From: Leucoraja erinacea
Lineage: Eukaryota
Direction: 5' to 3'
Length of the DNA stretch: 64,000 nucleotides
NCBI RefSeq assembly: GCF_028641065.1
Contig: NC_073395.1
Location: 14,508,001 to 14,572,000 of the forward strand
Every line of letters starts with the position of its first letter. The first letter of the stretch is position 1. The position numbers were made by a program, and so were the translations under genes. Positions 34,458-46,985 of this stretch are shown here, one piece after another. The notes below the pieces were generated by a model. That model was not told the DNA's origin. It did no database searches and worked only from the letters and a program-made list of their open reading frames with translations.

Positions 34458-36310
34458 CATAGAAACATAGAAACATAGAAATTAGGTGCAGGAGTAGGCC
34501 ATTCGGCCCTTCGAGCCTGCACCGCCATTCAATATGATCATGGCTGATCATCCAACTCAGTATCCCGTACCTGCCTTCTCTCCATACCCCCTGATCCCCT
34601 TAGCCACAAGGGCCACATCTAACTCCCTCTTAAATATAGCCAATGAACTGGCCTCAACTACCCTCTGTGGCAGAGAGTTCCAGAGATTCACCACTCTCTG
34701 CGTGAAAAAAGTTCTTCTCATCTCGGTTTTAAAGGATTTCCCCTTTTTCCTTAAGCTGTGACCCCTTGTCCTGGACTTCCCTAACATCGGGAACAATCTT
34801 CCTGCATCTAGCCTGTCCAACCCCTTAAGAATTTTGTAAGTTTCTATAAGATCCCCTCTCAATCTTCTAAATTCTAGAGAGTATAAACCAAGTCTATCCA
34901 GTCTTTCTTCATAAGACAGTCCTGACATCCCAGGAATCAGTCTGGTGAACCGTCTCTGCACTCCCTCTATGGCAATAATGTCCTTCCTCAGATTTGGAGA
35001 CCAAAACTGTACGCAATACTCCAGGTGTGGTCTCACCAAGACCCTGTACAACTGCAGTAGAATCTCTCTGCTCCTATACTCAAATCCTTTTGCAATGAAA
35101 GCTAACATACCATTCGCTTTCTTTACTGCCTGCTGCACCTGCATGCCTACCTTCAATGACTGGTGTACCATGACACCCAGGTCTCGCTGCATCTCCCCCT
35201 TTCCCAATCGGCCACCATTTAGATAATAGTCTGCTTTCCTATTTTTGCCACCAAAATGGATAACCTCACATTTATCCACATTATACTGCATCTGCCAAAC
35301 ATTTGCCCACTCACCCAGCCTATCCAAGTCACCCTGCAGTCTCCTAGCATCCTCCTCACAGCTAACACTGCCCCCCAGCTTAGTGTCATCTGCAAACTTG
35401 GAGATATTGCCTTCCATTCCCTCATCCAGATCATTAATATATATTGTAAATAGCTGGGGTCCCAGTACTGAGCCTTGGGGTACCCCACTAGTCACTGCCT
35501 GCCATTGTGAAAAGGACCCGTTTACTCCTACTCTTTGCTTCCTGTTTGCCAGCCAGTTCTCTATCCACATCAATACTGAACCCCCAATGCCTTGTGCTTT
35601 AAGTTTGTATACTAATTTCTTATGTGGGACCTTGTCGAAAGCCTTCTGGAAGTCCAGATACACCACATCCACTGGTTCTCCCCTATCCACGCTACTAGTT
35701 ACATCCTCGTAAAATTCTATAAGATTCGTCAGACATGATTTACCTTTCGTAAATCCATGCTGACTTTGTCCAATGATTTCACCACTTTCCAAATGTGCTG
35801 CTATCCCATCTTTAATAACTGACTCTAGCAGTTTCCCCACTACCGATGTTAGACTAACTGGTCTGTAATTCCCCATTTTCTCTCTCCCTCCCTTCTTAAA
35901 AAGTGGGGTTACGTTTGCTACCCGCCAATCTTCAGGAACTACTCCACAATCTAAAGAGTTTTGAAAGATTATTACTAATGCATCCACTATTTCTGGAGCT
36001 ACTTCCTTAAGTACTCTGGGATGCAGCCTATCTGGCCCTGGGGATTTATCGGCCTTTAATCCATTCAATTTACCCAACACCACTTCCCGGCTAACCTGGA
36101 TTTCACTCAATTCCTCCAACTCCTTTGACCCGCGGTCCCCTGCTATTTCCGGCAAATTATTTATGTCTTCCTTAGTGAAGACGGAACCAAAGTAGTTATT
36201 CAATTTGTCCGCCATATCCTTGTTCCCCATGATCAACTCCCCTGTTTCTGACTGCAAGGGACCTACATTTGTTTTAACTAATCTCTTTCTTTTCACATAT
36301 CTATAAAAAC
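34458..36310 (-). mobile_element. Young 5'-truncated CR1 (HER1-like) LINE
   Basis: (catagaaa)x3 tail, 3' UTR, 1.74-kb uninterrupted ORF2. Confidence 0.96.
34557..36296 (-). CDS. CR1 ORF2 reverse transcriptase domain (5'-truncated; endonuclease missing; no genuine start)
   Basis: KSPGPD, NYRPVSLTS, QHGF, YLDFQKAFDKV, SGVPQGSVLGP, FADDTKL, RDLGV, RPHLEYC; 579 codons with no stop. Confidence 0.95.
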   Translation of the reverse strand: MKRKRLVKTNVGPLQSETGELIMGNKDMADKLNNYFGSVFTKEDINNLPEIAGDRGSKELEELSEIQVSREVVLGKLNGLKADKSPGPDRLHPRVLKEVAPEIVDALVIIFQNSLDCGVVPEDWRVANVTPLFKKGGREKMGNYRPVSLTSVVGKLLESVIKDGIAAHLESGEIIGQSQHGFTKGKSCLTNLIEFYEDVTSSVDRGEPVDVVYLDFQKAFDKVPHKKLVYKLKAQGIGGSVLMWIENWLANRKQRVGVNGSFSQWQAVTSGVPQGSVLGPQLFTIYINDLDEGMEGNISKFADDTKLGGSVSCEEDARRLQGDLDRLGEWANVWQMQYNVDKCEVIHFGGKNRKADYYLNGGRLGKGEMQRDLGVMVHQSLKVGMQVQQAVKKANGMLAFIAKGFEYRSREILLQLYRVLVRPHLEYCVQFWSPNLRKDIIAIEGVQRRFTRLIPGMSGLSYEERLDRLGLYSLEFRRLRGDLIETYKILKGLDRLDAGRLFPMLGKSRTRGHSLRKKGKSFKTEMRRTFFTQRVVNLWNSLPQRVVEASSLAIFKRELDVALVAKGIRGYGEKAGTGY

Positions 36311-39779: not shown

Positions 39780-40082
39780 GGCATGGTGGCCCAGTGATAG
39801 AATGGCTGCCTTACAGCGCCAGAGACCTGGGTTTGATCCAGACTCCAGGTGCTGTCTGTATGGAGTTTGTGCGTTCTCCCTGCAATAGCGTGGGTTTTTT
39901 CCGGGATCTCCAGTTTCCTCCCACATGTTCATGTTTGTAGGCTAATTGGCTTGGTATAATTTTAAATTGTCCCTCGTGTGTGTAGGATAATGTGCAGGGA
40001 ACGGCGGTCAGTGTGGAGTCGGTGGGCCGCAGGTGCTTTTTCCCGGCTGTATCTCTACACTAAACGAAAGTAAACTAAACTA
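39780..40082 (+). mobile_element. HE1-like V-SINE
   Basis: Head, V-domain, taaactaaac tail. Confidence 0.85.
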
Positions 40083-40524
40083 GAGGAGTAGGGCACTTGG
40101 TCCGGCCCTGCCATTCAATATGATCTGCCCCCCATCACAACTCCTCATAGCCTCAATTCCCCGAATTTTCAAATATATATTTATCTTCCAATTTAATTAT
40201 CCTCAATAATCCAGCTTCCATGACCCTCTTGCTTACAGAATTATAGGGAGTCGGCAAGAAGAAATTCTGATGCACCTGAATTTTAAATGGCCGTTCCTCA
40301 TCTTGAGTTACTTTATTCAGGAACTACTGGGGTAGTTGCCAGCAATACAAACAAGAACTAGTCTTCAAATACTTCAATTGTAATTACAGGATGGGACATT
40401 GCACCATTGAATCATACGGTGAATCAATAGATAATATGATTGTACAGACATAAGGAACTGCAGATGCTGGAATCTGAAGCAGAACACAAAGTGCTGGAGT
40501 AATTCAGCAGGTTAGGCATCATCT

Positions 40525-40590
40525 GGCCCCATAGTAGAAGCATCCTCGTCCCAGGGCTGGGAACTGAAAGCATCCCGAGCTAATTCTGCC
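40525..40590 (+). ncRNA. HDV-like (CPEB3-like) self-cleaving ribozyme, probably decayed
   Basis: P1 GGCCCC / J1/2 AU / P2 AGUAGAA / P3 GCA / L3 UCCUCGU / P3' CCC / P1' AGGGCU / P1.1 GG / P4 region / J4/2 CUAA (C at 40580) / P2' UUCUGCC. Confidence 0.75.
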
Positions 40591-40718
40591 ACCGCCATCA
40601 TCTATTGCAACAGGCGATGGCTTCCACTGATTGTCGTCGGAAGCTTGCGTCTTTTTCAAGGCGGATGATGAAAGCGATGTCAACATTTGAAACATGGAAC
40701 ATGGACACAAAAGAAGAA
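40525..40718 (+). mobile_element. Ribozyme-headed short retroposon, copy 1; (GAA)n tail; TSD ggca(t/g)catct (40515-40524 / 40719-40728); inserted into a Penelope terminal repeat
   Basis: Colinear end-to-end with 44667-44860; both copies start GGCCCCATAG and end ggacac(a/g)aaagaagaag. Confidence 0.88.
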
Positions 40719-41321
40719 GGCAGCATCTGGGAAGGAATGGAAGGGCAATATTTTGGGTCGCACACTTCCTTAGACTGAAAGACACAAGGCCTAAAGAGAT
40801 AATGTGATTATGTTAGTCGGACAACATTGAAACATTACAGGATGGGATTAGGTAGGGGTCAGGACTAGTCGTTGTGCCACTTTAAGTGACAGGGTAAAAA
40901 TTGTTTTTTCTTGTCAATCAATATTTGCTTTTTTAAAATTCCATGAGCTATTCCTCTGTACAGTGGTAAAGGAAAAATGACACAAATTGCTGAAGTATTT
41001 CAACAGGTCAGACAGCATCTTTGGAGAAGATGGATAGGTAATGATTCAGATTGGCACCATTCTTTAGGCTGATGAGGGCGGGAGAGGGGGGGTGGTAAAG
41101 AAAACTGGGAGAGGAGGGGTAGGGCAAAGCCTGGCAAGGGATAGGCATATGGTGGGGGGGGGGATAGTGGAGGGGATGTGAAAGATAGCCAGACTTTGTC
41201 CTGCCTCTCCTCTCATCCAGCTTTTCCCACCCCTCCACCCCCAATCAATCTTACGAAGGGTCCCGACCTGTAACGTCACCTATACACGTACTCCAGACCT
41301 GCTGCCTGACCCGTTGAGTTA

Positions 41322-43496
41322 AGCCCCTGTCCCACTTAGGAAACCTGAACGGAAACCTCTGGTGACCTTGCCCACGACCCAAGGTTTCCATGAGGTTGCC
41401 GGAGGTTTTGGTCACTCTCCCTAATGGTCGAAAGTGGTTCATCGAGGTCGCTGCTTTTTTTTCAACATGTTTAAAACCGACCTCGACTTAAAATTGGTTG
41501 CCGTTTGGTCGAAGTAGTAGAGTGAGGTTGCTATTTACTTACAGGCAGTCGAAGGCCATCTCCTTCGCTGACTGGCCATTTTGATTGGCTCATTGGAGTT
41601 TCATGACCTAGAAGACTCGCGGGTAGGTAAAATGCCCGCTAAACTTTATNNNNNNNNNNNNNNNNNNNNNNNNNNNNNNNNNNNNNNNNNNNNNNNNNNN
41701 NNNNNNNNNNNNNNNNNNNNNNNNNNNNNNNNNNNNNNNNNNNNNNNNNNNNNNNNNNNNNNNNNNNNNNNNNNNNNNNNNNNNNNNNNNNNNNNNNNNN
41801 NNNNNNNNNNNNNNNNNNNNNNNNNNNNNNNNNNNNNNNNNNNNNNNNNNNNNNNNNNNNNNNNNNNNNNNNNNNNNNNNNNNNNNNNNNNNNNNNNNNN
41901 NNNNNNNNNNNNNNNNNNNNNNNNNNNNNNNNNNNNNNNNNNNNNNNNNNNNNNNNNNNNNNCCTTCTCTCTTCTCTCCCCCTTCTCCCCTCCCCCTTCT
42001 CTCCCCCTCTCTCCCCCTTCTCTCCTTCTCTCCCCCTTCTCTCCCCCTTTCTCTCCCCCTTCTCTCCCTTCTCTCCCCCTTCTCTCCCCCTTCTCTCCCC
42101 TTCTTCCCCCTCTCCNNNNNNNNNNNNNNNNNNNNNNNNNNNNNNNNNNNNNNNNNNNNNNNNNNNNNNNNNNNNNNNNNNNNNNNNNNNNNNNNNNNNN
42201 NNNNNNNNNNNNNNNNNNNNNNNNNNNNNNNNNNNNNNNNNNNNNNNNNNNNNNNNNNNNNNNNNNNNNNNNNNNNNNNNNNNNNNNNNNNNNNNNNNNN
42301 NNNCTCTCTCCCCCTTCTCTCCCNNNNNNNNNNNNNNNNNNNNNNNNNNNNNNNNNNNNNNNNNNNNNNNNNNNNNNNNNNNNNNNNNNNNNNNNNNNNN
42401 NNNNNNNNNNNNNNNNNNNNNNNNNNNNNNNNNNNNNNNNNNNNNNNNNNNNNNNNNNNNNNNNNNNNNNNNNNNNNNNNNNNNNNNNNNNNNNNNNNNN
42501 NCCTTCTCTCCCCCTTCTCCCTCCTTCTCTCCCTTCCCCCCTCTCTCTCTCCCCCCTCCCCCCTTCTCTCCTCTCTCCCCTTATCTCCCNNNNNNNNNNN
42601 NNNNNNNNNNNNNNNNNNNNNNNNNNNNNNNNNNNNNNNNNNNNNNNNNNNNNNNNNNNNNNNNNNNNNNNNNNNNNNNNNNNNNNNNNNNNNNNNNNNN
42701 NNNNNNNNNNNNNNNNNNNNNNNNNNNNNNNNNNNNNNNNNTCCCCCTCTCCCTTCTCTTCTCTCCCCCTTCTCTCCCCTCTCTTCTCTCCCCCTCTCTC
42801 CCCCTCTCCCCTCCTTCTTCTCTCCCCCTTCTCTTCTTCTCTCCCCTTCTTCTCTCCCCCTCTCTCCCTTCTCTCTCCCCTTCTCTCCCCCTTCTCTCTC
42901 CCCTTCTCTCCCCCCTCTCTCCTCCCCCTCTCTCCCCTTCTCNNNNNNNNNNNNNNNNNNNNNNNNNNNNNNNNNNNNNNNNNNNNNNNNNNNNNNNNNN
43001 NNNNNNNNNNNNNNNNNNNNNNNNNNNNNNNNNNNNNNNNNNNNNNNNNNNNNNNNNNNNNNNNNNNNNNNNNNNNNNNNNNNNNNNNNNNNNNNNNNNN
43101 NNNNNNNNNNNNNNNNNNNNNNNNNNNNNNNNNNNCCTTCTCTCCCTTCTCTCCCCTTCTCTCTCCCCCTTCTCTCCCCCCCTTCTCCCCCCCCCCCCTT
43201 CTCTCCCCGCGCTCTCTAAAGGACTTACTGTACTATGTGGCAGCCGTTTACCTCCTCTTCATCGCATAGACAGTGCTCCTCCGCTCTCCACGGCCCACAC
43301 CTTCGCGATGTGTTTGTATGTGTGTGTGTGCGTGTGCAGTCTGTAGATGCAGCTCGCGCTTCGGTCAATCCAGCTCGAGGCTTTGCAGGCGAGTGACCAA
43401 AACCTCCTGTGACCTTGTGGCGACCTTGCAGCGACCATGGTTGCGGGCAAGGTCGCCAGAGGTTGCTGTTTAGGTCGCCCAAGTGGGACAAGGGCT
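41322..43496. mobile_element. ~2.2-kb non-autonomous Harbinger/PIF element with CT-rich, N-masked interior; TSD TTA
   Basis: TTA|agcccctgtcccactt ... aagtgggacaagggct|TTA; removing it restores the host repeat ccgttgagttactcca. Confidence 0.88.
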
Positions 43497-44666
43497 TTAC
43501 TCCACCACTTTGTGTCTTTTTTTGTAAACCAGCATCTGCAGTTCCTCGTTTCTACAATTTTGAGGTGGCTGGATTCCCAGCAAATGTGTTTGAATATTCA
43601 GGGATGTCTTGACAGTGGAAATGTGCTCTCATTGTAAATATGTAATTTTACAGAAGCCACTTGTCCAAACTAAGGTATAAATAGTGAACTGTCTAAATAT
43701 AATGATTAAAACTTTACTTAATCATCTGCTTTATGCTTACCTTTGTGCTTAATGAGGATAAAATCTCAAAGTACTGAGCTCAGCCAGATTCATCTACAAG
43801 ATTGAACCAAGAAGGTCTCCAAGGAGATTCTTCCACCCGATCACCTGCAAAATGAAAATCGAAACAAAAAGAGAGTGGAAATCTAAAATAAAAAAAGAAC
43901 ATGCTGAAAACGCACGGTAGGTCAGGCGTCATCTGTGGGAAAAGAAAGGGAGTTAATATTTCAGGTTGATGGCTCGATTGTAATCATGCATTGTCTTTCT
44001 GTTGACTAGATAGCAGGCAACAAAGGCTTTTCACTGTTCCTCGGTACACGTGGCAATAAACTGAACTAAACTGATGAACATTTGCCGCAACTGTCTTTAT
44101 TGTATTACTCCCCTCCTGAATTTCTGCTTGGGTTGACCTTAAGTGCATGGTTCCTGGTCTGTGTGCGGCTCATTCAAAGTTAAAACAGAGGACAAGAGTG
44201 GAGAAAGTTAATAGGGGGCATGATTGAGGGATGTAAAATTCTGAAGGGTGTGAACAAGATAAACCAGGAAGCAGCTTTCAAGCAGCTGCTCTATAAGTTG
44301 CAGCTTTCCAAAACATTGGGTAGGTTGCAATTGGAGTGTTGCTTGCAGTTCTGCTCACCCCATGACAGGAAAGATGTGGAGGCATTGAAGCTGCAGAAGA
44401 GCTTTACCAGAATACTGCCAGGTTTAGAGGGTATTGGCCATAAGGAGAATTGGGCAAATTTGCAAGGTTTTCTCTGGAGCAGCAAAGGCTGAGGGGAGAC
44501 CTGAAACAAGTGTAACCATATAACATATAACCATATAACAATTACAGCACGGAAACAGGCCATCTCGGCCCTACAAGTCCGTGCCGAACAATTATTAATT
44601 ATAAAAAATGTATAAAATGATGAGAGACTTAGATCGGGTAGACAGTCGAAACCTTTCTCCTAGGGT

Positions 44667-44860
44667 CTTCTTCTTCTTTTCGTGTCCATCTTGTAACAAA
44701 TGTTGACCTCGCTGTCATCGTCCGTCCTGAAAAGACGCAAGCTTCTGGCGACAATCAGTGGAAGCCATCACTTGTCGCCATATATGATGGTGATAGCAGA
44801 ATTAGCTCAGGATACTTCCAGTTTCCAGCCCTGTGACATGGACGCTTCTGCTATGGGGCC
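44667..44860 (-). mobile_element. Ribozyme-headed short retroposon, copy 2; (GAA)n tail; TSD ttctcct(a/g)gggt (44655-44666 / 44861-44872)
   Basis: TSD and (ctt)n tail read directly; inserted in CR1. Confidence 0.9.
44795..44860 (-). ncRNA. HDV-like (CPEB3-like) self-cleaving ribozyme
   Basis: Minus strand GGCCCC AU AGCAGAA GCG UCCAUGU CAC AGGGCU GG AAACUGGAAGUAUCCUGAG CUAA UUCUGCU: perfect 7-bp P2, G.U at the first P1 pair, CC/GG P1.1, putative catalytic C at 44805. Confidence 0.8.
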
Positions 44861-45289
44861 TTCTCCTGGGGTGAAAATATCAAACACTAGGGAGCATAAG
44901 GACAGAGGGAGAAAGTTTAAAGGAGATGTGCAGGGCAAGTTTTTTTACACAGAATGAGGTTGGTGCCTGGAATGCACTGCCAGGGGTGGCGGTGGGAGTA
45001 GGTGCAACAATGGATTTTAAGAGGCTTTTAGATAGATACATGAAGATGTAAGAAGGGATGGAGGGACATCGAGAATGTGCTGATTGAAGGGATTAGGTTA
45101 AGTAGGCATCATGTATGGCACAGAAAGCATGGGCCGAACAGACTATTCCTCTGCCGTTCTGTTCTATGTTCTATGTTTCTAATGTTTAACGAGTGTTCGT
45201 CCCAGAGAGAGGTTCCAAGAGAAAGAGGCACAAACCAAAGGAAGTGATGTAGGATGCATAAAATACATTAGAGTATACAAAATAGCAAG

Positions 45290-46985
45290 GGCTGCAGGAA
45301 CCCTGGGCATTTTTCATGATGATACAACAGAAGAAGATTAAATCAGGAAGGGAGAAAATGAATCTTGGAAGAACAGTTGCACTCAGTATGAAAACTAACA
45401 GCAAAATGTTTTATGGATGCATAAATAGGAAGAGTGTACGAAGGAACAAAGGAAAAGGATGTCTAAGGTAAATGTGGGGCCTCTGGAGAATGAGACTAAT
45501 GAATTATTAACAACAAACTAAAAAAGGGCAGGCATGTTGAATAATCTTTTGCCTCCGTCTTCACCGTGGAAGGCATTGCTAATATCCCTAAGATATTGTA
45601 ACTCTGCGGGACATGCAGCATCTCTGGAGAGAAGGAATGGGCGATGTTTCGGGTCTCGACATGAAACGTCACCCATTCCTTCTCTCCAGAGATGCTGCCT
45701 GTCCCACTGAGTTACTCCAGCTTTTAGCGTCCCTCTTCGATTTAAACCAGCAGCTGAAGTTCCTTGATACATATCCCTAAGATATTAGGCGGGCTGACAT
45801 CAAAAAACATTGTGGACCGTACAAAAATCTAATTTACATGGGATAAAATACTGAAGGAACTCACGGGGCTAAAAGCTCACAACCTTTGACCTGATAGACT
45901 GCAAGTTAGGGTCTTTTTAAGGGCGATGGCTGTGCCGATAGTGGAGTTCTTTTTTTTTAATGTTTTCATAACTTGTTAAACTCTGAGAGAGAACCAGAAG
46001 TTAAAAAAACGGCTAGATAGCTTAACAGTTATTATTGCAAGATGCTAATGTAAAAAAATCAAAGAGAAATTGCAAATCATTTGGGAAAGCTGAATATGAT
46101 TAAACCTAGTAAATTTGACTTCATGAAAGGTAAATCACAATTGACAAATTGGCTCGAATTCTCAGTGGATGTAACAAGGTGTGTTGCTAGAATGGAACGT
46201 ATAATAACAGGAGTCATCAGACCCTTCAAGCCTGTGCTGCCAGTTAATATTACCATGGCTGATCCATGCTGGTCTCAACTCTTTCCCCGTACCCCACTAA
46301 TCTTCGATCTACCAATTATATATTTAGCTCTACTGTAAATACTTCTTGTGCGACAAAGAGTATTTAAATTTCCAAAAGGCATTTGTCAAGGTGCTATAAA
46401 AGAGACTGGTGCATAAGTTAGAAGCCCGTGGTTTTGGAGAACGTGTGTTAGTATGGATTTAAAACTGCCTCTCTCTTAGAAAACAGAGTGTCGAAACAGA
46501 GTGGAAATAAATGGGTTATTTTCAAATTGGATGTAAACGAGTACAGGAGTGCCGCAAGGATCAGTTCTTGGAACACGGTCATTCAATATTTATTTAATGA
46601 CCTAGAGGAAGGAACAGAGAAAGCAAAAGGCATGTTATTATCTTAATAGGGAGAGACCTCAAGTGAGTGAAGTTCAGAGGGATCAAGGTACTCTGGTGCA
46701 TGAATCACAAAAAGTCAGCATGTTGATCCATCAAGTAGCTAAGGCAAAAAGGTATTTGAGCCTTCATTCCAAAGGAGTTGGAAGGTTTGTTACAGTTTTA
46801 CAGAGTGTTGGTGAGGATTCACCTTAAATGCTGCACAAAGTCTTGGTTCCATCACCAAACAGAGGACATAAATGGCTTTGGAGGCAGTCCAATGGAAATT
46901 CACCAAGCTAATTCCTGGGATGAGAGAGTCCTACGAAGAGAGGCTAAATAGTTTGGCTCTGTATTCCTTGGAGTTTAGAAGATCT
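45290..46985 (+). mobile_element. Old CR1 ORF2 remnant
   Basis: FMKGKSQLTNWLEFSVDVT, aaatttccaaaaggcatttg (DFQKAFD), ggagtgccgcaaggatcagt (GVPQGS). Confidence 0.8.
45598..45770. mobile_element. Fold-back Penelope-derived insert; 16-bp TSD atatccctaagatatt (45582-45597 / 45771-45786)
   Basis: Inverted arms centred on gggtctcgac. Confidence 0.88.

What the first reader, a model, noticed from the sequence alone, without database searches (positions are those of the whole stretch)
40525..44860. Ribozyme-headed SINE: ~195-bp retroposon beginning exactly with an HDV-type ribozyme
Seen: two independent insertions (40525-40718 +, 44667-44860 -) in different host repeats, each with its own TSD, the same 5' nucleotide, a ~120-nt body and a (GAA)n tail. 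No tRNA A/B boxes are evident. The first 66 nt parse as the HDV nested double pseudoknot: P1 GGCCCC/AGGGCU with a G.U first pair, P2 AGCAGAA/UUCUGCU, P3 GCG/C(G)C, L3 UCC(U/A)(C/U)GU, P1.1 CC/GG, a P4 region and J4/2 CUAA holding the catalytic-C equivalent. Most pairing defects (GCA, CAC, C.A in P1) are explicable as CpG decay. Established: HDV-like ribozymes cleave just 5' of G1 and define the 5' ends of R2, RTE and some other LINEs. The element starting precisely at G1 is what that predicts. Inference: a promoterless SINE that excises its 5' end from host read-through transcripts and uses an RTE-like RT (the GAA tail). I know of no description of this in cartilaginous fish. Caveat: P1 has 6 bp rather than the usual 7.
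Basis: partly seen in the sequence, partly recalled or inferred. Interest (0 to 1): 0.92.

Follow-up and report, generated by a model that had tools for sequence, protein, structure and literature searches.

The report
Ribozyme-headed short retroposon, CPEB3 type
Two old copies of a 194-base jumping element begin exactly at the predicted cut site of a self-cleaving RNA fold that closely resembles the mammalian CPEB3 ribozyme, so the element probably trims its own 5' end out of host transcripts, though cutting itself has not been shown.

Summary
Two 194-base copies lie at 40525-40718 (+) and 44667-44860 (-). They are 83% alike, and each has its own 10-12-base target duplication and an (AAG)n tail. 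The assembly gaps lie between the copies, not in them.

The first 66 bases of both copies match only Rfam's CPEB3 ribozyme model, at 27.5 and 18.3 bits, below the cut-off of 35. Three of three contig pieces that run past the 5' end stop within one base of G1.

The same ribozyme core heads an endonuclease plus reverse-transcriptase LINE in metagenome contigs of an unknown eukaryote. There it scores 63 and 56 bits, above the cut-off, and its P1 letters covary with those of the window copies.

The element has no Pol III-type head, so it is better called an ORF-less non-autonomous LINE derivative than a SINE. Cleavage, the partner LINE and the suggested RTE link are untested.

This scan noted the same family earlier on other DNA of this genome. 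I found no paper describing it.

The parts
40525..40718 (+). Copy A of the retroposon (194 bases), about 10% diverged from the family majority
   Evidence: In one search, 20 listed positions have a majority letter that differs from copy A.
40525..40590 (+). Copy A head: CPEB3/HDV-type fold (P1 40525-30 with 40553-58; P2 40533-39 with 40584-90; P3 40540-42 with 40550-52). Four pairs are broken in this copy.
   Evidence: RF00622, 18.3 bits, E 0.34; pair counts; majority letters restore 40542, 40551, 40553 and 40590.
40580..40580 (+). C in J4/2 (CUAA) that aligns with the catalytic C of the CPEB3 model
   Evidence: cmscan alignments of copy B and of the LINE relatives. Copy A is in register with copy B without gaps.
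40515..40524 (+). Copy A, left target-site duplication (ggcatcatct)
   Evidence: The host-repeat continuation is seen.
40719..40728 (+). Copy A, right target-site duplication (ggcagcatct). A contig from organism A and one from organism B bridge this junction.
   Evidence: table 8, records 8 and 16.
40709..40718 (+). Copy A, A-rich/(AAG)n tail
44667..44860 (-). Copy B of the retroposon (194 bases)
44795..44860 (-). Copy B head: the same fold, with two pairs broken (P1 C.A and P3 C.A)
   Evidence: RF00622, 27.5 bits, E 3.4e-4 in 5.5 kb; E 0.004 in the whole window.
44805..44805 (-). C in J4/2 of copy B, the catalytic-C equivalent
   Evidence: alignment.
44861..44872 (-). Copy B, upstream target-site duplication (accccaggagaa)
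44655..44666 (-). Copy B, downstream target-site duplication (accctaggagaa)
44667..44680 (-). Copy B, A-rich/(AAG)4 tail

Best explanation
These are two old, decayed copies of an ORF-less, non-autonomous non-LTR retroposon, about 194 bases long. Its first 66 bases encode a CPEB3-type HDV-like self-cleaving ribozyme.

Most likely mechanism:
- A source copy has no promoter of its own and is transcribed as part of a longer host transcript (inferred).
- The nested double pseudoknot folds and cuts just 5' of G1, which gives the RNA its exact 5' end (inferred from the fold and from where copies begin).
- A partner LINE's reverse transcriptase recognises the 3' end and its (AAG)n tail and copies the RNA into a nicked target. 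This leaves 10-12-base target duplications (the duplications are observed; the partner is unknown).

The ribozyme core shares ancestry with one that heads an endonuclease plus reverse-transcriptase LINE in another eukaryote, and with the mammalian CPEB3 ribozyme.
For: - Rfam: among 24 matches with E up to 10 in 5.5 kb, only CPEB3_ribozyme falls on the copies, and it falls on both, starting at the element's first base.
- Family-majority letters from raw RNA reads (run X24, first mate on + / on -) repair all four pairs broken in copy A: 40542 A>G 28/35 and 28/34; 40551 C>G 27/38 and 29/36; 40553 A>G 33/38 and 32/36; 40590 C>T 58/69 and 37/52. 40535 T>C (27/31, 29/30) turns a U.G pair into C-G. 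Among the rows shown, no majority change breaks a pair (43 rows were not shown).
- 5' ends: copy B's duplication ends exactly at G1. All 3 of the 16 listed contig pieces that continue into unlike DNA past the 5' end stop at 40524, 40525 or 40526.
- LINE relative: 6 of 34 metagenome loci found with an 18-base core motif (two genomic places) hold a complete ribozyme. It scores 63.2 and 55.6 bits against a cut-off of 35. About 300 bases downstream lie Exo_endo_phos_2 (E 1.6e-5) and RVT_1 (E 4e-34) pieces.
- Covariation: P1 columns 19/48 and 20/47 are C-G in the window copies and G-C in the LINE. P1 is one pair shorter on both strands and keeps the terminal G.U.
- No Pol III-type head: ARAGORN finds 0 genes, and Rfam gives no tRNA, 5S or 7SL match on the copies.
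Against: - Cleavage was not measured.
- Both window copies score below Rfam's cut-off (27.5 and 18.3 against 35) and have broken pairs.
- P4 is weak: -4.7 and -3.4 kcal/mol, z -0.7 and -0.6. It also uses the G's that P1.1 would need.
- P1 has 6 pairs, not the 7 of CPEB3.
- Read laying reported no place where many RNA molecules begin or end (table 6). That test was blind at 40525, because the adjoining host repeat has about 5,000 reads of depth against about 65 on the head.
- In DNA contigs the summed word depth of the head (1.4-5.7 thousand) is far below that of the body (about 90-110 thousand). This may mean many 5'-truncated copies, or a commoner family that shares the body. Raw RNA reads show only a two-fold drop, about the same as at the 3' edge.
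- The partner LINE is not in the window. The body shows no likeness to the metagenome LINE outside the ribozyme.
Confidence: 0.72

Rival explanations
1. The head is only a carried-over 5' end. The element arose by internal deletion of a ribozyme-headed LINE and keeps that LINE's first bases, but its RNA 5' end is set by a promoter in or just before the head, as in the dual promoter/ribozyme Pr77 of L1Tc. Cleavage would play no part in this family.
For: - Bipartite non-autonomous LINEs normally keep the exact 5' end of their parent (PMC5786205, section 23, read whole).
- L1Tc's first 77 bases act as both promoter and ribozyme (PMC3383444, abstract in the listing).
- No RNA 5'-end pile-up was reported (table 6).
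Against: - The family majority keeps all 16 P1, P2 and P3 pairs, the G.U at the cut site and the J4/2 C.
- P1 changed by compensating changes relative to the LINE relative. That points to selection on the fold within retroposon lineages.
- The RNA 5'-end test was blind here.
Confidence: 0.14
2. It is an ordinary Pol III SINE whose head derives from an unrecognised small RNA, and the ribozyme likeness is fortuitous.
For: The element is short, has target duplications and a microsatellite tail, and is abundant, as true SINEs are.
Against: - No tRNA, 5S, 7SL or snRNA match lies on the copies.
- The head matches CPEB3's primary sequence through J1/2, P2, P3, L3 and J4/2-P2'.
- The same core passes Rfam's cut-off at the head of a LINE.
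Confidence: 0.04
3. It is a chance resemblance: two related pieces of a larger repeat that merely happen to fit the fold.
For: Only two copies are in the window, and both fall below Rfam's cut-off.
Against: - The whole-window E-value for copy B is 0.004.
- Each copy has its own target duplication.
- Thousands of family reads and contigs occur in two organisms.
- The majority letters improve the fit.
Confidence: 0.02

Closest known systems
Mammalian CPEB3 ribozyme (Rfam RF00622)
   Same: It has the same nested double-pseudoknot plan and nearly the same letters in J1/2, P2 (AGCAGAA/UUCUGCU), P3 (GCG/CGC), L3 and J4/2. In the LINE relative, 36 of the 38 positions from G1 to J1/4 and 10 of the 11 in J4/2-P2' equal the Rfam consensus (my count from the alignment).
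   Different: - CPEB3 is a single-copy intronic sequence, reported as 'not found outside of mammals' (PMC8233481, passage read). This one is the head of a multi-copy retroposon in a non-mammal.
- P1 has 6 pairs with other letters, and P4 is unrelated and weak.
- The window copies score below the family cut-off.
NARTc/RIME and SIDER of trypanosomatids (non-autonomous partners of L1Tc/ingi)
   Same: They are ORF-less non-autonomous retroposons whose first bases are an HDV-like ribozyme shared with the autonomous LINE (PMC3383444, PMC3185411 and PMC4035085: abstracts in the listing; passages of PMC4035085).
   Different: They occur in protists. The ribozyme sequence differs and doubles as the Pr77 promoter. 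No link to CPEB3 has been described.
R2 SIDEs of Drosophila (short internally deleted R2 elements)
   Same: They keep the 5' ribozyme and the 3' end of the parent LINE and are mobilised in trans (PMC3414825, abstract in the listing).
   Different: They insert site-specifically in 28S rDNA and are co-transcribed with rRNA. The element here is dispersed, with variable target duplications.
Bipartite ORF-less non-autonomous LINEs of the RTE and Vingi clades (Bov-A, WALLSI3, Vingi-1_EE derivatives)
   Same: They have the same architecture, a LINE 5' end plus a LINE 3' end with no Pol III head, and are thought to be Pol II transcripts (PMC5786205, section 23, read whole).
   Different: [quoted passage not shown] The parent LINE of the present element was not identified here.

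Membership tests
HDV-like self-cleaving ribozymes | Nested double pseudoknot: P1 and P2 cross, with P3 inside P1 | tested here: met
   of 18 pairs, 88.9% of 72 cells pair, against 33-47% when the register is slid. The family majority completes all 16 P1, P2 and P3 pairs.
HDV-like self-cleaving ribozymes | G.U wobble closing P1 at the cleavage site, with the cut 5' of G1 | tested here: met
   Columns 17/50 are G.U in both window copies. G1 is the first base of the element.
HDV-like self-cleaving ribozymes | Catalytic C in J4/2 | tested here: met
   The C at 40580 and 44805 aligns with the C of the model's CGAA. That this C is the catalytic residue is recalled knowledge.
HDV-like self-cleaving ribozymes | P1.1 (two L3 C's pairing with the G's after P1') and a P4 stem | tested here: inconclusive
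   CC in L3 and GG after P1' are present. The register differs between the window copies and the LINE, and 75% of cells pair. P4 is weak, with z -0.7 and -0.6, and competes for the same G's. That P4 is dispensable in minimal HDV-like ribozymes is recalled knowledge.
HDV-like self-cleaving ribozymes | Self-cleavage activity | not testable with these tools
The RNA-read 5'-end test was blind at this locus.
Rfam RF00622 CPEB3_ribozyme | Score at or above the gathering cut-off of 35 bits | tested here: not met
   The window copies score 27.5 and 18.3 bits. The metagenome LINE relatives score 63.2 and 55.6 bits, so they meet it.
SINE in the strict sense | Head derived from tRNA, 7SL, 5S or snRNA, with an internal Pol III promoter | tested here: not met
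   ARAGORN finds 0 genes in 40000-45500. No such Rfam match lies on the copies at E up to 10.
SINE in the strict sense | Short, non-coding, flanked by target duplications, with a LINE-type tail | tested here: met
   The element is 194 bases long, has 10- and 12-base duplications and an (AAG)n tail.
Bipartite non-autonomous LINE | 5' end and 3' end shared with an autonomous LINE of the same genome | not testable with these tools
   No partner is in the window: the only RT ORF, 34557-36296 (-), has a different tail, (ATTTCTATG)n. The genome itself cannot be searched. A LINE with the same ribozyme core exists in another organism. Notes of this scan name a Vingi-like partner, unchecked.

The most novel reading that the evidence does not exclude
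The 'mammal-only' CPEB3 ribozyme is the domesticated head of this retroposon lineage. A LINE, or its short non-autonomous derivative, carrying this very ribozyme would have landed in a CPEB3 intron of an early mammal, and only its head was kept. The elements found here and the metagenome LINE would then be the missing outgroups for that ribozyme.
Probability: 0.5. Interest if true: 0.9.

Novelty: new variant of a known kind. Interest (0 to 1): 0.8.

Why it matters
Ribozyme-trimmed retrotransposons are known from insects (R2, RTE) and trypanosomes (L1Tc/NARTc). I found no account of a short, abundant, ribozyme-headed retroposon in a vertebrate.

The ribozyme is also not just any HDV-like fold. 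It shares P2, P3, L3 and J4/2 letters with the mammalian CPEB3 ribozyme, whose origin is unknown and which a 2021 study said has no outgroup. A LINE whose ribozyme passes Rfam's CPEB3 cut-off, together with this retroposon family, gives that question concrete sequences to compare. It also offers many natural variants of the fold for activity tests.

Tried and rejected
Searches for more copies or other ribozyme heads:
- A third copy in the window: none by blastn, by Rfam on the whole window or by my own model with filters off.
- The same 18-base motif in genome contigs (15 loci) and viral contigs (3 loci): all chance hits without ribozyme context. L007 and its viral twins L050 and L052 have TTCTGCT nearby but no P1 or P3 context.

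Partner LINE:
- tblastn with the metagenome LINE pieces hits only the RT ORF at 34557-36296 (-), at 27% identity. Its tail, (ATTTCTATG)n, differs from the element's, so I rejected it as partner.
- The element's body shows no likeness to the metagenome LINE outside the ribozyme.

Organism and clade of the metagenome LINE were not resolved:
- 1,394 RT relatives have E up to 1e-10, but almost all are unnamed. The best named one is from Elysia marginata at 58% identity.
- The Atlas gives only generic RVT_1 clusters.
- Neighbouring ORFs have no Pfam match, or are another RT piece.

RNA evidence for cutting: read laying reported no begin/end pile-up, but the flank's depth swamps the test.

P1 length: a passage search of PMC4035085 did not settle whether 6-pair P1 stems are active.

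Literature returned no paper on an HDV/CPEB3-type ribozyme-headed retroposon in cartilaginous fish, nor on a CPEB3-type ribozyme in a LINE. One search was badly framed and says nothing. PMC3002237 (the Vingi paper) and PMC3308841 (the Ruminski 2011 paper cited for HDV-like ribozymes in non-LTR retrotransposons) are not held. I asked for no supplements. Supplementary figure S1 of PMC5786205 and the sequence list of PMC8233481 might bear on the claims about Vingi 5' ends and about non-mammalian CPEB3 sequences.
Full report
**1. What is in the window.** Copy A lies at 40525-40718 on the + strand and copy B at 44667-44860 on the - strand. They align at 83% identity over 195-196 columns, and likeness stops at both ends of the 194 bases.

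- Copy A is flanked by ggcatcatct (40515-40524) and ggcagcatct (40719-40728).
- Copy B is flanked by accccaggagaa (44861-44872) and accctaggagaa (44655-44666).
- Both end in ...GGACAC(A/G)AAAAG(AAG)n.
- In copy B the base after the upstream duplication is the element's G1, while the base after the downstream duplication is A, so its 5' end is exact.
- In copy A the first two bases (GG) could also belong to the duplication.
- Copy A interrupts a very abundant host repeat. That repeat has 11 further hits in the window and resumes after the insertion.
- Copy B's insertion site was not shown to be a repeat.

**2. Assembly gaps.** The thirteen N runs of the window include five between 41650 and 43135. 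All five lie between the copies, 931 bases or more from either. Each copy with its duplications is in unbroken sequence. Read-derived contigs bridge the 3' junction of copy A in organism A (record 8, 0 differences) and in organism B (record 16, 1 difference). A 107-base contig covers 40500-40606 without a difference, but it has only 25 letters left of the 5' junction. Only the spacing and relative orientation of the two copies rest on the scaffold.

**3. The head is a CPEB3-type fold.** cmscan of 40000-45500 at E up to 10 gave 24 matches. The only ones on the copies are CPEB3_ribozyme (RF00622), on both:
- copy B: 44869-44795 (-), 27.5 bits, E 3.4e-4;
- copy A: 40513-40590 (+), 18.3 bits, E 0.34.

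The family cut-off is 35 bits, so neither copy passes. In the whole window, copy B's match has E 0.004. No other ribozyme family and no tRNA, 5S or 7SL family matched the copies, and ARAGORN found nothing.

The alignment shows likeness in letters, not only in pairing. J1/2, P2, P3 and L3 (AUAGCAGAAGCGUCCAUGUCAC against the model's AcaGCAGAAGCGUUCACGUCGC) and J4/2-P2' (CUAAUUCUGCU against CGAAUUCUGCU) are nearly the same.

**4. The family consensus test.** I found runs that hold this locus. I then laid DNA contigs of organism A (X1) and organism B (X3), and raw RNA reads of organism A (X24, oligo-dT; X22, single-cell), on 40400-40850 at 80% likeness. Between 3,833 and 21,306 records were laid per run, most of them on the host repeat.

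On the head, the majority letter differs from copy A at the positions below. Counts are from X24, first mate on + / first mate on -.

| Position | Change | Count | Effect |
|---|---|---|---|
| 40535 | T>C | 27/31, 29/30 | P2: U.G becomes C-G |
| 40542 | A>G | 28/35, 28/34 | P3 becomes GCG |
| 40546 | T>A | 35/36, 35/35 | L3 becomes UCCACGU |
| 40551 | C>G | 27/38, 29/36 | P3' becomes CGC |
| 40553 | A>G | 33/38, 32/36 | P1' becomes GGGGCU |
| 40561 | G>A | 53/57, 42/44 | unpaired or P4 region |
| 40567 | A>G | 58/58, 46/46 | unpaired or P4 region |
| 40571 | C>T | 57/60, 49/50 | unpaired or P4 region |
| 40590 | C>T | 58/69, 37/52 | P2' becomes UUCUGCU |

- The DNA contigs agree in direction at most of these positions.
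- At 40535 and 40542 the change is below half of the summed contig depth in X1 (516 of 1,350; 608 of 1,455).
- All four pairs broken in copy A, and both pairs broken in copy B, are therefore repaired in the family majority.
- No listed majority change breaks a pair. 43 rows were not shown.
- A minority letter, 40552 C>T (17/38, 22/36), would make a G.U pair in P3.

**5. 5' ends.** Of the 16 contig pieces listed (42,352 were not shown), three continue into unlike DNA past the 5' end. They stop at 40524 (X1 record 2), 40525 (X1 record 3) and 40526 (X3 record 9). The other pieces that lie within the element end at contig ends and say nothing.

**6. Results against, from the same call.**
- Table 6 lists no place where many molecules begin or end. 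The rule needs a fifth of the neighbouring depth. The host repeat beside 40525 has about 2,770 + 2,350 reads against 33 + 32 on the head, so the test could not have seen a pile-up.
- In contigs the summed word depth is 1.4-5.7 thousand on 40528-40559 but about 90-110 thousand on 40576-40607. This could mean many 5'-truncated copies, or a commoner family with the same body.
- Raw RNA reads show 65 on the head, about 130 mid-body and 73 at the 3' edge. That is the shape expected from edge effects.
- The CpG-rich head may simply collapse less well into high-depth contigs. I leave this open.
- RNA reads fall on both orientations about equally, as expected for passive transcription or an unstranded library.

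**7. A LINE with the same ribozyme.**
- An 18-base core motif from copy B, with one Y, was scanned in three collections. The metagenome contigs gave 34 loci.
- Six of these (L006, L010 and L030 are one place; L011, L016 and L021 are a second) hold a complete ribozyme. It scores 55.6 and 63.2 bits, above Rfam's cut-off of 35.
- From G1 on, the two places are 92% alike. The 100 bases upstream do not align, apart from a TCATCYGA motif 7-14 bases before G1. The LINE's own 5' boundary is therefore at or very near G1, but two places cannot fix it.
- About 300 bases downstream come ORF pieces with Exo_endo_phos_2 (E 1.6e-5, below its cut-off) and RVT_1 (E 4e-34). This is an APE-type LINE with a degenerate ORF.
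- The 15 genome loci and 3 viral loci are chance hits.

**8. Covariation.** I aligned the two window copies with the two LINE versions (A2) and counted P1, P2, P3 and P1.1.
- 88.9% of 72 cells pair, against 33-47% in six slid registers.
- P1 columns 19/48 and 20/47 are C-G in the window copies and G-C in the LINE.
- P1 in the window element is one pair shorter on both strands, yet still ends in G.U.
- With four sequences from two lineages this amounts to one comparison, not many events. 10 of 500 shuffles reach the observed score.
- P2, P3, L3 and J4/2 are the same letters in both lineages and nearly the same in the Rfam CPEB3 consensus. In the LINE, 36 of 38 positions from G1 to J1/4 and 10 of 11 in J4/2-P2' match it (my count from the alignment).
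- A review states that only six nucleotides are invariant among HDV-like ribozymes (PMC8256844, passage). Such identity in helices therefore points to common descent rather than convergence.
- P4 is unrelated in sequence. It is a good stem in one LINE version (-8.2 kcal/mol, z -2.9) and weak in the window copies (z -0.7 and -0.6).

**9. What it is and how it works.** The element has no Pol III-type head, so by the usual definition it is not a SINE. It fits the 'bipartite ORF-absent non-autonomous LINE' of PMC5786205 (section 23, read whole).
- That paper reports such elements from RTE, Ingi, Vingi and R2.
- The steps of the mechanism, with what is inferred and what is observed, are set out under Best explanation.
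- The two copies in this window are about 10% from the family majority and carry broken pairs, so they are relics.
- Other first-reader notes of this scan name a Vingi-like LINE with the same ribozyme and 3' end. I could not check them.
- The only RT ORF in the window has a different tail, (ATTTCTATG)n, so it is not the partner.

**10. Known or new.**
- Ribozyme-headed non-autonomous retroposons are known: NARTc and SIDER in trypanosomatids and R2 SIDEs in flies (abstracts in the listing).
- Six literature searches returned nothing on such an element in cartilaginous fish or any vertebrate, nor on a CPEB3-type ribozyme in a LINE.
- PMC5753468 lists Vingi traces in the human genome (passage).
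- The two primary papers on Vingi and on the LINE ribozymes cited by PMC5786205 are not held, so I cannot exclude that they show something similar.

**11. Earlier findings of this scan.** The scan noted the same thing earlier on other DNA of this genome. It noted a 190-base family with the same head (s1-877965), several minimal-ribozyme families, and the CPEB3 likeness at 44795-44860 in this window (s1-908646). I repeated the key steps independently here: the Rfam match, the family majority, and the LINE in metagenomes.

I did not verify that the genome is a cartilaginous fish. The runs are coded.

Noticed in passing
window 40432-40527 and 40719-40760: The host repeat carrying copy A is extremely abundant. 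Summed contig word depth reaches 2.8 million against about 14 for unique flank, and it accounts for thousands of RNA reads. It has 11 further hits in this window.
   Followed up: partly
window 41078-41245: A long, near-perfect hairpin matches several plant and animal miRNA-precursor models on both strands, far below their cut-offs (for example MIR1437, 40.6 bits against 168). It looks like a palindromic repeat rather than a miRNA gene.
   Followed up: no
window 34557-36296 (-), tail near 34460-34500: A 579-aa ORF has an RVT_1 domain (E 4e-33). Downstream on the same strand lies an (ATTTCTATG)n-type tail, as in CR1-type LINEs (recalled). It is not the partner of the ribozyme element.
   Followed up: partly
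window 40532-40533: About half of the oligo-dT RNA reads on the head carry T>C and A>C together (13/30 and 18/29). The A>C is absent from the DNA contigs of the same species (0 of 1,143 depth). This may be one highly expressed diverged copy or subfamily.
   Followed up: no
window 40641: 15 of 105 oligo-dT RNA reads lack 5 bases here, and no DNA contig shows the deletion. This is probably a subfamily.
   Followed up: no
window 41581-43269 (+): The 562-aa 'ORF' listed here runs through N gaps and is an artefact of the unread letters.
   Followed up: no
L030 5554-6027 (+) and L011 1381-2347: The metagenome contig that carries the ribozyme-headed LINE also holds a second, unrelated RT fragment. 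Place II has about 965 extra bases inside the LINE relative to place I. The host is a repeat-rich eukaryote of unknown identity.
   Followed up: partly
window 40670-40850 against run X3: Organism B has the same insertion at the same site: a 485-base contig with 1 difference across the 3' junction. It also has the family at about half the summed depth. The insertion therefore predates the split of the two sampled organisms, or they are very close.
   Followed up: no
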